From Macrostomum lignano (lineage: Eukaryota): a stretch of 64,000 bases of DNA. The notes beneath the pieces are model-generated. The model was not told the origin of the DNA, made no database searches, and saw nothing but the letters and a program-made list of their open reading frames with translations. Below, in pieces: positions 10,077-37,510 of the stretch. The translations under genes were made by a program, and so were the position numbers. Location of the stretch: positions 124,001 to 188,000 of the forward strand of contig NIVC01002244.1 in the NCBI GenBank assembly GCA_002269645.1. Direction: 5' to 3'. Positions within the stretch are counted from its first letter, which is position 1, and the number at the start of each line of letters is the position of its first letter.

Positions 10077-10676
10077 ATGTCAGCTGTTGTAACGTTGCTT
10101 GTCGGCCTTCAAAAGGCCATTATTCAAGGCCTCAGCGTCGCGGTGAGTCTGCTTTAAAACACTGTTTTGTTTGTTAAACCTTATTTTATAAAAAAATCCA
10201 AAAATTCCCAGGCCCTGTCAGTGACGCAAGTTCTGCTGCCCGTGGCCATCATCTCGTCGGTGGTGGTTGTGCGGCATGTGTCGCCGCCTGAGTCTCTGGC
10301 TCCGTGTAAGTGAAAAAAGCCTCAATGCTTTCGATAAAATTTGGGCCTTTTAGGGCCGAACAAACTAAAAGAGGGTTGCCCCACTACTCACCATCGACAG
10401 GCCAGTACCGAGGTGTCAACATGCCGTCGGAGGGCACGCTGAGCTTCATGCAGTCCTTCGGCTGCAACCTGGACAACCAGTGCCTGCCGCCCAATTACAC
10501 GGAGACGCCGAACGAGGCCATCGCTCGCGGCCGGTTCAAACGGCTCGACAAGGCGCTAACGCCGATACTGATTAACGACACCAAGATGGCCAGCTTGAAG
10601 AAGCTGCCAGAAGTCACCAAAGCCATCATAAAGCTGGGAAATTCGGCAGCGGCAAATAATCTGTCCAGCTTGCTGG
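10077..10676 (+). CDS. ABCA exons 1-3 (10077-10142, 10212-10305, 10401-10676): N-terminus, TM1, start of ECD1
   Basis: [22 protein letters not shown] | [32 protein letters not shown] | [11 protein letters not shown]..., with GTGAGT/GTAAGT donors and CAG acceptors. Confidence 0.85.
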
Positions 10677-34600: not shown

Positions 34601-37510
34601 CAGCTGAACACCGAGACTTTGTAAGTGAAATTGAGTTGATTTTGCCTTATTTTTTGTAAAAAGGATGAACTGCACTTAATCCTACAAGTTTTGCGACCAG
34701 ATAAATAAAACTATTGTATAGCTAATTATTTCTCTGCCATTTGCGTCATGTCTACAACAAACAAACAAACAATTAAATTGAAAAACTCAACCCACAGTGA
34801 CCTGGCCATCAAGGACGCAGGCTTGGCCATGTGCATCGTTTTCGCGCTCTGCTTCGTGCCAGCCAGCATCTCTCTGACAGTGTCGAACGAGCGGTTCTCA
34901 GGCGAACAAGTGCATCTACGTCTGTACGGAGTTGGCATTCCTACCTACTGGCTGACATCCTTCGTCTGGGACATACTGATGTACCTGCTGCCCCTAGGAA
35001 TTGTGATTGGTATAATGGCCGCGTTCCAAATCGATCTGTACACGGCAAACTTAAACCTGCCAGCAATCGCGATGCTTCTAGCTCTGTTCGGAACGTCCGC
35101 AATCCCACTGAGCTACCTGGTGTCCAGGATGATGCGCTCTCCAGCAGGCGGCTTTCTGCTATCTTTCTTTATTCTCTTCTTTGTTGGCATTGTGCTGTTT
35201 AGCCTCCTACTGCTACTGCAGTTCTACGTGAACTTTACCGACAAAGAGCTGACCTTGCAGATTCTCACCTACGTGTTCATGGCTCTGCCGTCCTTCAGCC
35301 TTGGCAACGGAGTCTATCAGGTGGTGGAAAACCAGTGGAAGGCCTCCATTCTAAAGAGCTACGGAGCCAGCGAGTACGCCGATCCGTTCACCATGGCTAT
35401 GGTTGGACCCCACGCAATCGCTATGGGCGTCGGTTGCGTGGTGTTCCTTCTCATCAACATACTGATTGACATTCGCTGCCGTGGCCGCAACCGCCAGGCC
35501 CGATTATCCTACCTGACCGATGGTGGGTCCGACGTCGGCGTCCAGGAGGAATTCGACCGTGTCAACAGCGGCGCCTGCAGACAGGATCCGATCCAGCTGA
35601 CTGGCCTGGGAATGACCTTCCGCACGGTTCGCGGTTTCCGCATCCATGCGCTGGACAACCTCACCATGTCCGTGGCGGAGGGCACCTGCCTAGGCCTGCT
35701 CGGACCCAACGGTAGCGGCAAGTCTACAACCTTCAACATCCTCACTCGGCAGCTGAATGGCTACAGCGGCTACTGCAGCATCGAGGGACTCGGCTACTGT
35801 CCGCAGTCCAATCCGCTGGACAAGGAGATGACTGTGACGGAGACTCTGGTGTTCTACGCTCGTCTACTGGGCCTGTCCAGCAAGGACCAGGATGTGCAGC
35901 TGGAGCAACTGATCTCAGCGCTGCGCCTGCCGCCGAACAAGGTCACCAAGGCGCTTAGCGGCGGTCAGCGTCGGAAGCTGTCCGTTGCCATCGCCTTCCT
36001 CGGGGCGCCGCGCTGCATCCTCCTGGACGAGCCGTCGGCCGGCCTGGATGCTGTCAGCCGAGCCGCGCTCAAGCAGCTCGTGCGCTGCGTGGTTTCTCAG
36101 GGGTCCTGCGTGCTGTTCACCTCGCACTGCATGGAGGAGGTCGAAGGCGTCTGCGATAGAGTTGCCATCCTAATTGGAGGCCGCCTGCGCGCCATTGGCA
36201 GTATGGACGAGCTCAAGGAGCAGCTGGGACGCAGCTTTACTCTCACTGTGCGCGGCTCTCGCGATGATAAGGAGCAGCTGACAAAATACCTGCAGAACGC
36301 GTTTCCAAATGCAGAGTGCAAGGTCAGTTTCCATTTAATCTTATAAGATAACTTCATCAACGCGACTTTTGGCTGTATTCCCATGACACGATCTTCCCAA
36401 CACTTGCAAGTCAACTGTTCTTATCAATTTTAGATGAGCGCCGCCGGTGTCTCTGAATACGCCGTGCCGATCACCACCAAGCTGCACGAGATTTTCGAGG
36501 CCATGGAGAAGTGCGCTCAAGACAGTCTGTGCTCCGAGTACACAGTGAAGCAGACCACCTTGGAACAGGTGCGCTTTGAAATACGATTTGCATCAGCTAA
36601 AACTGGGTCATACTACTGACAGTAGCTTCGTGGGTTAATTAGTGCCCAAATCAATGTTAGCTCCATTATTTGTTTTGGCTCACGCGTGGGTTGTTGGCCT
36701 GGAACTGGATCCATTTTGTTGACAATGAAACGACAATGACAAAGGTCAGGGCAGATGTGCGCGCATCTGTGAAAGTATCTGACCGACTATGCATGCATCG
36801 CATAATGAAACTTGTTCTCTGGTACAGAACATACAGAAGGCACCAAAAATACGCGTTAACCGCTGAGACGACAAGGCTCGGAGGGAGTTGCTATACACTC
36901 GTATTACACTGTGATTCTTGGGGGGGGGGAGAATTGCTAAGATTAAGAAGGGTCGCTTAAATGGTGTCAATGCTCCCAAGGGTCAATTGGAAGTTGTTGA
37001 TAGGTCAAACCAAAGGTAGATGTCAAATGGACAGTTGGGGTTAAGCGATGGCTTAAATGGAGGATTTGATACCTTCCTTAGCTTACAGGGAATGCTGATA
37101 TCTTAGGCTAGATAACTTGCCTTGAGGGCTGATTATTCTTATGATACTAACAATATCGACTGTATACAATGTTCAAAGCTACATATATTGCTAAAATCGT
37201 ACTGTTTTTAATACGTTCAATACACAAAACTTCACAGGTGTTCCTGGAGCTGTGCAGCCACCAGACGGACAGCTGGCGTGAGGAAGGCAGCGCCTCCGGC
37301 TCCGGCAGCCAGCCGTCCGGCAGCAGCGACTCGCCTCCATCGTCTAGCGCCGGCTCAACGGCTCTGATGAAGCGCAGCAGCTGGAAACAGTCGATTGACA
37401 GCCGAGACGGTCTGGACTACAACCTGGACTTGGACAAGTCCGGCACAATGCGCTCCGCCAGTCAGGGTGAAGGCAGCGAGAGAACCAACATCTACAAAGT
37501 CTATCTGTAG
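10077..37510 (+). CDS. Giant ABC transporter subfamily A protein (ABCA1/4/7/12/13-like clade), ~40 exons, roughly 5200+ aa
   Basis: ABCA N-terminal motif [28 protein letters not shown]. Two TMDs. NBD1 [10 protein letters not shown] / [10 protein letters not shown] / ILDEPT. NBD2 [10 protein letters not shown] / [10 protein letters not shown] / LLDEPS. ECD2 motifs WFDNRGYH and [14 protein letters not shown] flanked exons chain in compatible phases where checked. Orthology to a specific vertebrate ABCA is not established. Confidence 0.93.
10858..30594 (+). CDS. ABCA expanded extracellular domain 1 exons. Approximate: 10918-11653, 11730-11839, 12437-12631, 13144-13321, 13826-13966, 14110-14345, 14476-15279, 15357-15507, 15760-16276, 16497-16633, 17640-17981, 18854-19080, 19745-gap, 20370-21446, 21783-22335, 22419-22627, 22715-22976, 23070-23496, 23916-24179, 24264-24453, 24548-24720, 25064-25481, 25573-26184, 26265-26445, 26536-26843, 27597-27717, 27815-27947, 28906-29294, 29770-29904, 29998-30113, 30208-30594
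   Basis: A series of + strand, codon-biased ORF segments rich in L/A/S/Q/N with many N-x-S/T sequons and paired cysteines, flanked by splice signals and lying between the ABCA N-terminus and TMD1. Individual boundaries are approximate. Confidence 0.75.
11848..12361. repeat. (TCTG)n microsatellite with GTCTTAGT variants, in an ABCA intron
   Basis: Seen directly. Confidence 0.97.
12657..13109. repeat. 33-34-bp minisatellite (GAGAGGGAGGCGGAGAGGCAGATTCTCAAGGACT)n, intronic
   Basis: About 13 near-identical copies. Confidence 0.95.
16320..16410. repeat. (CATAAT)n hexanucleotide microsatellite
   Basis: Seen directly. Confidence 0.95.
16775..17276. repeat. 20-bp minisatellite (GAGCGCCCCTGTCTCTTAGT)n, intronic
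   Basis: About 25 copies, mostly identical. Confidence 0.97.
19165..19430 (-). mobile_element. tRNA-derived SINE in an ABCA intron
   Basis: Minus strand has a tRNA-like head with B-box GGTTCGATTCTC, followed by TGTGTCCTTGAGCAAG..ACACTTAAC and CACCCAGCTGTAAAATGGGT, motifs I recall from V/Nin/Deu-type SINE central domains. Confidence 0.7.
19831..20327. other. Assembly gap (497 N) interrupting an ABCA exon
   Basis: Run of N; coding-like sequence on the left side. Confidence 1.
26893..27392. repeat. 22-bp minisatellite (ACAGGTGACAACCTAGTGTCAA)n, intronic
   Basis: About 22 copies in two alternating variants (GTGTCAA / GTATCGA). Confidence 0.96.
28237..28848. repeat. 34-bp minisatellite (CATGAGTGCGTCTGAGTGTCAGGTGTCAACCGAA)x18, intronic
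   Basis: Near-perfect head-to-tail copies with no spacers. Confidence 0.97.
30904..34620 (+). CDS. ABCA end of ECD1, TMD1, NBD1, R1 domain, TM7 and ECD2 (exons 30904-32769, 32856-32987, 33089-34620)
   Basis: VCG...FCRN cysteine pair, hydrophobic TM2-6, Walker A at 32738-32766, GFCPQHN Q-loop, LSGGQ signature, ILDEPT Walker B. Two apparent 1-nt frameshifts near 31467 and 33597. Confidence 0.92.
34798..37510 (+). CDS. ABCA TMD2, NBD2, R2 and C-terminus (exons 34798-36322, 36434-36568, 37238-37510)
   Basis: Walker [11 protein letters not shown] at 35702, [33 protein letters not shown]|VFLELC. Stop TAG at 37508-37510. Confidence 0.93.

What the first reader, a model, noticed from the sequence alone, without database searches (positions are those of the whole stretch)
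10077..37510. ABCA13-scale giant ABCA transporter in an invertebrate-type genome
Summed exon estimate is about 15.8 kb excluding the gap (~5250 aa). About 3700 aa lie between TM1 and TM2, versus roughly 600 aa in ABCA1/4 and about 3500 in vertebrate ABCA13 (recalled values). This is either a deep ABCA12/13-like lineage outside vertebrates or an independent, convergent ECD1 expansion.
Basis: partly seen in the sequence, partly recalled or inferred. Interest (0 to 1): 0.75.

Follow-up and report, generated by a model that had tools for sequence, protein, structure and literature searches.

The report
Giant modular ABCA transporter gene, flatworm
The window holds one flatworm gene for a roughly 5,500-residue ABCA lipid-transporter relative whose huge outer domain is 17 tandem copies of one helical module; similar giant genes are already predicted in many other invertebrates, so it is a real but not unique find.

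Summary
Window 10077-37510 (+) carries about 40 GT-AG exons of one ABCA gene. The window is Macrostomum lignano assembly Mlig_3_7, contig NIVC01002244.1.

My model has 5,506 aa. TM1 is at residues 23-42. ECD1 is about 3,975 aa with no TM-like segment, 52 Cys and 92 N-glycosylation sequons. A canonical TMD1-NBD1-ECD2-TMD2-NBD2 core follows.

The N gap lies inside a coding exon. Another assembly's protein supplies the 219 missing residues (657 nt, against 497 N).

As assembled, the gene is broken by four single-base indels:
- two beside the gap, creating TGA at 20357-20359;
- one at 31469/31470;
- one at 33601/33602.

A 98.5-99% identical paralogous locus reads through all of them, so they are probably consensus errors. 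Public annotation shows only fragments named "hypothetical protein".

ECD1 is a tandem array of about 17 diverged 215-aa modules, each with a Cys-x(15-40)-Cys pair. Module 17 aligns to the single equivalent region of human ABCA1.

The same arrays occur in giant ABCAs of molluscs, arthropods and a crinoid. The core groups with these and with vertebrate ABCA12/13 (NJ bootstrap 65%). This favours a deep lineage over a convergent expansion.

Verdict: a new member of a known kind.

The parts
10077..10142 (+). Exon 1: start codon and the first 22 residues.
   Evidence: ATG at 10077, donor GTGAGT at 10143. M. lignano residues 11-257 align to the horseshoe-crab-cluster giant P0162 at 8-235 (69 bits).
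10212..10305 (+). Exon 2: TM1 (residues 23-42).
   Evidence: Acceptor cccag|GCC and donor GTAAGT. The only hydrophobic peak before residue 4021.
10401..10676 (+). Exon 3: conserved ABCA start of ECD1 ([15 protein letters not shown]...), with Cys 54, 75 and 81.
   Evidence: The same Cys triplet (51-55, 72-76, 78-82) is seen in ABCA12/13 and the invertebrate giants.
10919..19830 (+). ECD1 exons 4-17, carrying modules 1-6. Exons: 10919-11653, 11730-11839, 12437-12631, 13145-13320, 13430-13548, 13827-13966, 14112-14345, 14476-15278, 15358-15509, 15771-16275, 16497-16633, 17642-17982, 18854-19080, 19745-19830. The last exon runs into the gap. Introns hold minisatellites at 11848-12361, 12658-13109 and 16773-17275.
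   Evidence: Dynamic-programming parse and splice sites. P0001 maps from 12400 onward. Tandem repeats.
19831..20327 (+). Assembly gap (497 N) inside a coding exon. At least 657 nt (219 aa) are missing, including the Cys pair of module 7.
   Evidence: P0001 residues 977-1195 fall in the gap. L001 bases 1-230 are coding sequence continuous with the right flank.
20328..20398 (+). Right gap flank. It has two compensating single-base indels (a missing C after 20353 and an extra T at 20380) and a resulting in-frame TGA at 20357-20359.
   Evidence: Alignment with both L001 copies. P0001 reads [23 protein letters not shown].
20399..30593 (+). ECD1 exons carrying modules 7-17 (18 exons). Intronic minisatellites at 26894-27393 and 28236-28849.
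   Evidence: The region is identical to annotated P0006, which starts at the first ATG after the gap (20522). Module Cys pairs.
30904..32769 (+). One exon: the conserved C-terminal part of ECD1, TMD1, and Walker A of NBD1 (GPNGAGKST). A base is missing between 31469 and 31470 (CTAAAA-TGC). As assembled, this leads to a stop at 31587-31589, which is the end of annotated P0006.
   Evidence: P0002 reads ...STNQMLKLLQNFTSC... through this site.
32856..32987 (+). NBD1 exon, from after Walker A to the Q-loop.
33089..34620 (+). One exon: NBD1 signature ([10 protein letters not shown]), Walker B, linker, TM7 and ECD2. A base is missing between 33601 and 33602 (CCCGAA-GAGG). As assembled, this leads to a stop at 33624-33626.
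34798..36322 (+). TMD2 (TM8-12) and NBD2: Walker [10 protein letters not shown], signature [10 protein letters not shown], Walker B ILLDEP.
   Evidence: Pfam ABC2_membrane_3 at 6.5e-20 and ABC_tran at 1.7e-22. NBD2 alignment.
36434..37510 (+). Last two exons, 36434-36568 and 37238-37510, with the stop at 37508-37510. They hold a C-terminal R1-like regulatory region.
   Evidence: PF23321 R1_ABCA1 scores 26.0 bits against a cut-off of 27 on P0002.

Best explanation
Window 10077-37510 (+) is a single gene of about 40 exons in the flatworm Macrostomum lignano. It encodes a full-size ABCA transporter of about 5,500 residues.

The gene belongs to a pan-bilaterian group of giant ABCA12/13-like proteins. 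Its first extracellular or luminal domain (ECD1, about 3,975 aa) keeps the canonical ABCA ends. Between them it has about 17 tandem, strongly diverged copies of a 190-245-aa all-helical module. Each module carries one Cys-x(15-40)-Cys pair and several N-glycosylation sequons. ABCA1-type proteins hold a single copy of this module.

Inferred mechanism (not shown here): an ATP-driven lipid floppase or exporter, like other ABCA proteins. Both NBDs carry canonical Walker A, Q-loop, signature and Walker B motifs. The module array would extend the helical ECD of the ABCA1 type into a long, glycosylated, disulfide-stapled extension that receives, holds or targets lipid.

In this assembly copy the reading frame is interrupted by the gap and four single-base indels. 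These are most likely consensus errors, not real lesions.
For: Organism and locus.
- P0001, P0002 and P0006 are M. lignano proteins.
- L002 (NIVC01002244.1) is 100% identical to the window.

ABCA core.
- Pfam domains.
- Best solved relatives: ABCA1 700 bits, ABCA4 667, ABCA7 639, ABCA3 543.
- NBD motifs are read directly from the sequence.

One transcription unit.
- Three annotated models tile 12400-27709 (P0001), 20522-31589 (P0006) and the equivalent of 30182-37510 (P0002), with overlaps.
- Exons 1-4 align to the N-termini of arthropod giants.
- RefSeq giants in other phyla carry the N-terminus, module array and core in one protein.

Coding constraint. pN/pS is 0.15 for the ECD and 0.23 for the core.

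Modules.
- Cys pairs recur with a period of 192-245 aa for most of the array.
- In a leave-one-out HMM test all 17 modules score above the shuffle mean; 7 beat all 100 shuffles and one more beats 99.
- Module 17 plus the ECD1 C-terminus aligns to ABCA1 residues 141-628 at E=2.7e-16, with the first Cys on ABCA1's SLCNGS.
- A cross-species module HMM finds exactly one module in ABCA1/7-like, ABCA12 and ABCA13 proteins and 9 consecutive modules in the crinoid.

Indels as errors.
- L001 reads through all four sites.
- Over its upstream 10 kb, L001 itself carries about 30 small coding-exon indels against the window (mostly 1-nt deletions), as many as the substitutions there and far outnumbering them in the first exon.
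Against: - The exon 4-5-6 junctions rest only on my parse and on module spacing.
- The four indels could be real, making this copy a young pseudogene.
- The NJ support for the ABCA12/13-plus-giants clade is only 65%, and M. lignano sits on a long branch.
- AlphaFold models of the modules were poor (pLDDT 54 and 62, pTM 0.34). Foldseek gave nothing (best E = 0.84). The rod or tunnel picture is therefore inference.
- Substrate and cellular location are unknown.
Confidence: 0.82

Rival explanations
1. This copy (locus Mlig007002g3) is a recently decayed pseudogene. The TGA beside the gap and the two frameshifts are real. Only paralogous copies such as g1 make the full protein.
For: As assembled there are three frame-breaking lesions. 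NCBI's model stops at the first frameshift (P0006). At least one other copy of this locus exists in the same assembly; by recall, M. lignano carries several near-identical copies of many loci.
Against: All lesions are single-base indels. Two of them lie within 55 nt of a gap edge. In its unannotated part the paralogous contig has roughly as many small indels as substitutions, and in its first exon 11 gap bases against 1 mismatch, which is the signature of consensus error. pN/pS of 0.15-0.23 shows constraint since the copies split, although this cannot date a very recent loss.
Confidence: 0.15
2. The locus holds two or more genes: a secreted or TM1-anchored repeat protein (10-30 kb) and an ordinary-sized ABCA transporter starting near 30 kb.
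For: Public annotation gives only separate fragments. Mammalian ABCA13 is reported to have a short isoform lacking the N-terminal region (PMC7948424).
Against: The annotated fragments overlap one another. The breaks coincide with the gap and with frameshifts. An ABCA core starting near 30 kb would lack TM1 and the conserved ECD1 start, which lie at 10.1-10.7 kb. Orthologous giants in six phyla are single proteins with the same order of parts.
Confidence: 0.06
3. The module array arose independently in the Macrostomum lineage, as a convergent expansion that resembles ABCA13 only in size.
For: The bulk of the vertebrate ABCA12/13 ECD1 shows no detectable similarity to the modules. Middle modules give only weak, partly off-diagonal matches to other giants. 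Module number differs between taxa, from about 9 to about 20.
Against: Modules within M. lignano are too diverged for BLAST to detect, so the duplications are old. Module 1 and modules 16-17 are one-to-one alignable with arthropod and mollusc giants, with conserved Cys pairs. The profile hits multiple modules in a crinoid, molluscs and chelicerates, with zero hits in shuffled controls.
Confidence: 0.08

Closest known systems
Vertebrate ABCA13 (human 5,058 aa, with an ECD of more than 3,500 aa; PMC3293240)
   Same: Full-size ABCA with the giant insertion at the same place, in ECD1 between TM1 and TM2. The total size is similar. The core falls in the same NJ clade. The last ECD1 module and the ECD1 C-terminus are conserved.
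   Different: The vertebrate ECD1 lacks the regular Cys-pair periodicity. Apart from the last module, it shows no detectable similarity to the M. lignano modules. ABCA12 and ABCA13 split within vertebrates (100% bootstrap), so the flatworm gene is at best co-orthologous to both.
Vertebrate ABCA12 (glucosylceramide transporter; 2,595 aa in human, 4,138-7,012 aa in fishes, amphibians and lungfish)
   Same: Among the best named hits to the core: Rhinatrema 720 bits, plus Protopterus, Pelobates, Lepisosteus and Ambystoma. Same clade.
   Different: As for ABCA13: only one recognisable module. Its epidermal lipid-barrier function is established in mammals and untested here.
Predicted giant ABCAs of other invertebrates: Sinanodonta (at least 4,286 aa), Patella 3,078, Tachypleus 4,743, Dermacentor about 4,130, Vespula 4,022-4,501 (named ABCA13 in V. 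squamosa), Leptosia 4,025, Chamberlinius 3,865, Antedon 3,932; also the copepod 'ABCA13' of 3,124 aa (PMC4247197)
   Same: The same architecture. The same Cys-pair module array. Colinear N-terminus and last modules. Nearest core relatives.
   Different: M. lignano has 17 modules and 5,506 aa. Only two unnamed run-assembly (Logan) proteins are comparable or larger: P0018 at 6,516 aa and P0162 at 5,484 aa. Sequence identity to the relatives is only 29-33%. None of these proteins has been studied experimentally, as far as the held literature shows.
Human ABCA1 (PDB 5XJY, 7TBW)
   Same: Best solved relative of the core (700 bits). ECD1 residues 141-628 align to module 17 plus the ECD1 C-terminus (E=2.7e-16). 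The N-terminal Cys triplet is shared.
   Different: ABCA1 has one module where M. lignano has 17. ABCA1-type proteins fall outside the giant clade in the tree.

Membership tests
ABCA subfamily of ABC transporters | Full-size layout: TMD1-NBD1-TMD2-NBD2 in one polypeptide. | tested here: met
   ABC2_membrane_3 plus ABC_tran found twice. Hydropathy peaks at 4021-4150 and 4607-5088.
ABCA subfamily of ABC transporters | A large extracellular domain after the first helix of each half (ECD1 between TM1 and TM2, ECD2 between TM7 and TM8). | tested here: met
   ECD1 spans residues 46-4020. ECD2 spans about 4630-4860. Neither has a hydrophobic segment. ECD1 aligns to ABCA1 ECD1.
ABCA subfamily of ABC transporters | Canonical Walker A, Q-loop, signature and Walker B motifs in both NBDs. 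| tested here: met
   NBD1: GPNGAGKST / CPQ / [10 protein letters not shown] / ILDEP. NBD2: GPNGSGKST / CPQ / [10 protein letters not shown] / LLDEP.
ABCA subfamily of ABC transporters | ABCA-type regulatory (R) domain after the NBD. | tested here: inconclusive
   PF23321 R1_ABCA1 scores 26.0 bits, E=9.9e-6, just under the 27-bit cut-off.
ABCA12/13 clade | The core groups with vertebrate ABCA12 and ABCA13 rather than with ABCA1/2/4/7-like or ABCA3/5-like proteins. | tested here: inconclusive
   The NJ topology agrees, but bootstrap support is only 65%. The top-ranked core relatives are giants and ABCA12/13. No maximum-likelihood tree was made, and no human reference set was available.
ABCA12/13 clade | ECD1 much larger than the roughly 600 aa of ABCA1-type proteins. 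| tested here: met
   3,975 aa.
ABCA12/13 clade | The giant N-terminal region is homologous to that of vertebrate ABCA13. | tested here: not met
   The module HMM and hhalign detect only the last module of ABCA13 (10.8-15.4 bits; probability 34%). The remaining windows do not differ from reversed controls.
Invertebrate giant modular ABCAs (no published family name found) | A tandem array of modules of about 215 aa, each with one Cys pair. | tested here: met
   17 modules. The same pattern is seen in Antedon, Sinanodonta, P0018, horseshoe crab, millipede, wasp and tick.
Invertebrate giant modular ABCAs (no published family name found) | Colinear similarity of the ECD1 ends, and cross-hits between modules. 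| tested here: met
   phmmer: N-terminus 38-69 bits, C-terminal modules 60-172 bits. HMM hits with no hits in shuffled controls. Alignment A4.

The most novel reading that the evidence does not exclude
The giant ECD1 of ABCA12/13-like transporters began as a tandem amplification of the single helical, Cys-stapled ECD1 module of an ABCA1-type ancestor. This happened before the protostome-deuterostome split.

Invertebrates, with M. lignano the longest named example at 17 modules, would still show the array plainly. The 'N-terminal region without homology to any known protein' of vertebrate ABCA13 (PMC7948424) would be its eroded remnant.

I found no description of this module array in the papers searched.
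Probability: 0.45. Interest if true: 0.55.

Novelty: new member of a known kind. Interest (0 to 1): 0.4.

Why it matters
ABCA13 is described as the largest ABC protein. [quoted passage not shown]

A flatworm gene of the same or larger size, with an ECD1 that resolves into 17 copies of a module also present once in ABCA1, gives a readable template for what these giant domains are made of. M. lignano is a laboratory model, so the question could be tested by experiment.

There is also a practical point. The public Mlig_3_7 annotation misses the gene. It shows only one 2,165-aa "hypothetical protein" here, and nothing over the N-terminal exons or the transporter core. The cause is a gap plus single-base indels, so gene-family counts for this genome will be wrong for such long genes.

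Tried and rejected
1. False introns in my parse. My dynamic-programming parse joined frames with a 35-nt intron (31416-31450) and a 59-nt intron (33529-33587). The paralog and P0002 show both are single-base deletions inside continuous exons. Both introns are rejected.

2. Spurious exon. A poly-Ile exon at 16324-16431 came from a microsatellite. It is absent from P0001 and was dropped.

3. Self-BLAST of ECD1 found no repeats. The periodicity appeared only from the Cys positions and profile tests.

4. A profile of the M. lignano modules alone found no ABCA chain in the PDB. The best hit was MAD2, which is spurious.

5. HMM iterations 4 and 5 drifted into the TMD/NBD regions and were discarded. 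Iteration 3 was used.

6. Structure prediction led nowhere. AlphaFold2 of module 9 with a 12-paralog alignment gave pLDDT 54. Modules 16-17 with a 12-taxon alignment gave pLDDT 62 and pTM 0.34. Both models are all-helical. Foldseek against the PDB gave nothing (best E = 0.84).

7. Pfam finds no domain in the ECD.

8. The look-up of encoding contigs found no contig for P0001.

9. The third protein search, with the N-terminal 637 aa, returned nothing even though P0001 shares about 200 identical residues with the query. That negative result is not informative.

10. An alignment of overlapping module pairs (A1) aligned out of register and was not used.

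
Full report
**Identity of the window**

A search with concatenated ECD reading frames returned one protein, P0001. It is a 2,768-aa UniRef fragment from Macrostomum lignano.

A search with the transporter core returned two NCBI proteins:
- P0002: "hypothetical protein BOX15_Mlig007002g1, partial", 1,951 aa.
- P0006: "BOX15_Mlig007002g3", 2,165 aa.

The contig that encodes P0006 is NIVC01002244.1 of GCA_002269645.1. It is 100% identical to the window on both sides of the gap. Window position 1 corresponds to contig position 124,001.

**Gene structure**

Stop-free stretches on the + strand between 10.3 and 37.5 kb are long and protein-like. Pfam places ABC2_membrane_3 plus ABC_tran twice, at 31.3-33.6 kb and at 34.7-36.3 kb.

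I wrote a small gene finder. It uses codon log-odds trained on the long stretches, requires GT-AG introns, tracks the frame, and charges a penalty for frameshifts. I ran it separately on each side of the gap. It chains 18 + 26 exons, and most splice sites are strong (GTAAGT or GTGAGT donors, YAG acceptors).

After corrections the model has about 40 exons and 5,506 residues:

| Feature | Residues |
|---|---|
| TM1 | 23-42 |
| ECD1 | 46-4020 |
| TMD1 | from 4021 |
| Walker A of NBD1 | 4298 |
| TM7 | about 4607 |
| ECD2 | about 4630-4860 |
| TMD2 | from about 4865 |
| Walker A of NBD2 | 5165 |

The corrections were:
- dropping a poly-Ile exon derived from a microsatellite;
- moving one donor from 26429 to 26462;
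- adopting P0006's exon choices;
- merging two false mini-introns.

**The gap**

- The exon beginning at 19745 runs into the N run.
- P0001 comes from a different M. lignano assembly. It matches 19743-19829 with residues 948-976 and 20330-21442 with residues 1196-1566. So 219 residues (657 nt) belong in a gap written as 497 N.
- The paralogous locus L001 starts 230 nt inside the missing stretch and is coding right up to the flank.
- The missing piece holds the Cys pair of module 7 and fits the module period.

The gap therefore sits inside one exon of about 2.4 kb, not in an intron, and its length is underestimated.

**Lesions in this copy**

| Position | Change relative to L001 | Consequence as assembled |
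|---|---|---|
| after 20353 | one C missing | in-frame TGA at 20357-20359 |
| 20380 | one extra T | restores the frame 28 nt later |
| between 31469 and 31470 | one base missing | stop at 31587-31589 |
| between 33601 and 33602 | one base missing | stop at 33624-33626 |

- The first two differences hold against both copies in L001 and against P0001.
- The third and fourth differences are relative to L001.
- P0002 reads through the last two sites (STNQMLKLLQNFTSC; [15 protein letters not shown]). P0006 ends exactly at the first premature stop.
- This explains the public annotation: one 2,165-aa hypothetical protein, running from the first ATG after the gap to the frameshift stop. Nothing is called over exons 1-17 or over the transporter core.

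I read the indels as consensus errors, for four reasons:
- All are single bases.
- Two lie next to the gap.
- L001's own unannotated 10 kb carries about 30 small coding-exon indels against the window, mostly 1-nt deletions. That is as many as the substitutions there; in the first exon the count is 11 gap bases against 1 mismatch.
- Substitutions between the copies show purifying selection. pN/pS is 0.15 in the ECD exons (21 synonymous, 10 non-synonymous) and 0.23 in the core (11 and 8).

A young pseudogene cannot be excluded. I give it about 0.15.

**One gene or several**

No RNA data could be consulted, so the case for one gene is indirect:
- The three annotated models overlap and tile 12.4-37.5 kb.
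- Exons 1-4 encode TM1, the conserved ABCA start of ECD1 and module 1. They align from residue 11 to the N-termini of horseshoe-crab, wasp, tick and millipede giants.
- A core starting near 30 kb would lack TM1.
- Orthologous giants in other phyla are single proteins with the same order of parts.

**What ECD1 is made of**

ECD1 has no Pfam domain and no BLAST-detectable self-similarity. Its 52 cysteines, however, fall mostly into pairs 15-40 residues apart. The pairs recur every 192-245 residues, apart from two shorter steps near the C-terminal end. The first Cys of each pair is at 218, 447, 653, 883, 1087, 1308, 1553, 1752, 1973, 2193, 2412, 2641, 2834, 3026, 3232, 3360 and 3572. A recurring local motif is ...LC-x8-L/F...-x-LC-N-x-S/T.

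In a leave-one-out HMM test:
- all 17 modules score above the mean of 100 composition-matched shuffles;
- seven exceed every shuffle, and one more exceeds 99 of 100.

phmmer aligns modules 16-17 plus the ECD1 C-terminus to human ABCA1 residues 141-628 (E=2.7e-16). The first Cys of module 17 falls on ABCA1's ...SLCNGS....

A cross-species module HMM gives:
- exactly one hit in ABCA1/7-like, ABCA12 and ABCA13 proteins;
- nine consecutive hits in the crinoid giant.

So the giant domain is a tandem amplification of a module that ordinary ABCAs have once.

**Relatives**

An exhaustive HMMER search of 1.84 billion representative proteins, using module 17 through NBD1 as the query, ranks a striking set of giants first. 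Their lengths are 3,000-7,012 aa and TMD1 starts at residue 2,000-5,700.

Names recovered:

| Group | Protein and length (aa) |
|---|---|
| Molluscs | Sinanodonta woodiana, at least 4,286; Patella vulgata 3,078; Biomphalaria, Bulinus and Plakobranchus fragments |
| Chelicerates | Tachypleus tridentatus 4,743; Dermacentor ticks about 4,130 |
| Insects | Vespula wasps 4,022-4,501 (one named ABCA13); Leptosia nina 4,025 |
| Myriapod | Chamberlinius hualienensis 3,865 |
| Echinoderm | Antedon mediterranea 3,932 |
| Nematode | Trichinella zimbabwensis, at least 3,794 |
| Vertebrate ABCA12 | Salminus 4,138; Lepisosteus 5,270; Ambystoma 5,222-5,436; Mantella 6,172; Pelobates 6,762; Protopterus 7,012 |
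| Vertebrate ABCA13 | Heterocephalus 4,998; Vombatus 4,904-5,003; Stegostoma 4,824-4,883 |

Evidence that the module array is shared with the invertebrate giants:
- The M. lignano module profile hits several modules in these proteins and none in block-shuffled controls.
- Their cysteines show the same pair-and-period pattern.
- The last two modules align residue by residue across flatworm, molluscs and arthropods, with both Cys pairs conserved.

**Tree**

I built an NJ tree of the ECD1 end plus TMD1 plus NBD1 (130 sequences, 499 columns, 100 bootstraps).

| Clade | Bootstrap |
|---|---|
| Crinoid + M. lignano + mollusc giants + arthropod giants + ABCA12 + ABCA13 | 65% |
| Vertebrate ABCA12 + ABCA13 | 100% |
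| M. lignano + molluscs + arthropods | 53% |

ABCA1/7-like and ABCA2-like proteins fall outside the first clade.

**Limits of the ABCA13 comparison**

In vertebrate ABCA13 and ABCA12 the module HMM finds only the last module. hhalign of the module profile against sliding windows of ABCA13 and ABCA12 ECD1 alignments beats reversed-sequence controls only at ABCA13 residues 2820-3209 (probability 34%, E=4e-4).

Clade membership is therefore moderately supported. Whether the vertebrate expansion descends from the same array is open.

**How it probably works (inference)**

- Both NBDs carry intact catalytic motifs.
- The core is closest to lipid-transporting ABCAs.
- ABCA12 moves glucosylceramide.
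- ABCA13 drives ATP-dependent internalisation of cholesterol and gangliosides and needs its long N-terminal region (PMC7948424).
- A Drosophila ABCA12 paralog serves the cuticular lipid barrier (PMC6980720, abstract).

I therefore expect an ATP-driven lipid transporter. Its 17 glycosylated, disulfide-stapled helical modules would extend the ABCA-type ECD into a long extracellular or luminal structure. The shape could not be shown, because both AlphaFold models were of low confidence and Foldseek gave nothing.

**Novelty and score**

Giant ABCA12/13-like predictions already exist for many invertebrates in public databases. Arthropod sister genes of ABCA12/13, and a 3,124-aa copepod "ABCA13", are in the literature (PMC3724490, PMC4247197). 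The gene is therefore a new member of a known kind.

Two things may be new:
- recognition of this gene in M. lignano, where annotation shows only fragments;
- the explicit 17-module reading of ECD1, for which I found no description in the held papers.

Interest: 0.4.

Noticed in passing
window 40896-41849 (+) and 45475-46407 (-): Two intronless-looking ORFs of about 310 aa end in a C3HC4 RING finger (PF13920, E=1.9e-8 and 4.3e-6). They lie in inverted orientation, with long (ACAG)n arrays at 44636-45387 and 46486-48472 between and beside them. The paralogous locus L001 also has a RING gene downstream of the ABCA gene (22927-24624, -).
   Followed up: partly
window 63216-63674 (-): An ORF with NSD-type PHD and C5HCH zinc fingers (PF17982 at 3e-8, PF23011 at 4.9e-7). 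It is probably an exon of an NSD-like histone methyltransferase gene running off the window.
   Followed up: partly
window 347-845, 4802-5943, 8057-9126, 42480-43123, 51450-52773, 55463-56536, 58402-58971, 59370-60680, 61280-62325: The window has a very high load of minisatellites, with periods of 12-46 nt and arrays of up to 2 kb. More lie inside ABCA introns (11848-12361, 12658-13109, 16773-17275, 26894-27393, 28236-28849). They create long spurious ORFs on both strands.
   Followed up: no
L001 220-953 and 976-2273: Both stretches of the paralogous contig match window 20328 onward. This is either a tandem duplication of about 750 nt or an assembly artefact in NIVC01001121.1, at the place where the window has its gap. 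The region seems hard to assemble in every copy.
   Followed up: no
window about 12510-12530 (exon 12437-12631): P0001, from the other assembly, switches frame in the middle of this exon at an A-run (AMELK|KSVQSAS...), whereas the window stays open in one frame ([18 protein letters not shown]...). Indel errors therefore also affect the other assembly's protein. UniRef's name for P0001, 'Ephrin_rec_like domain-containing protein', has no support in Pfam scans of the equivalent window-encoded ECD sequence.
   Followed up: partly
window 35740-35830 (NBD2, model residues about 5173-5200): The stretch between Walker A and the Q-loop of NBD2 is 15-30 residues shorter than in most relatives. The crinoid protein is similarly short. 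There is no intron at this place, so the shortness is a real feature of the exon.
   Followed up: partly
tool behaviour: The word-indexed protein search with model residues 1-637 returned no hit, although P0001 shares about 200 identical residues with that query. Negative results from that tool should not be read as absence.
   Followed up: no
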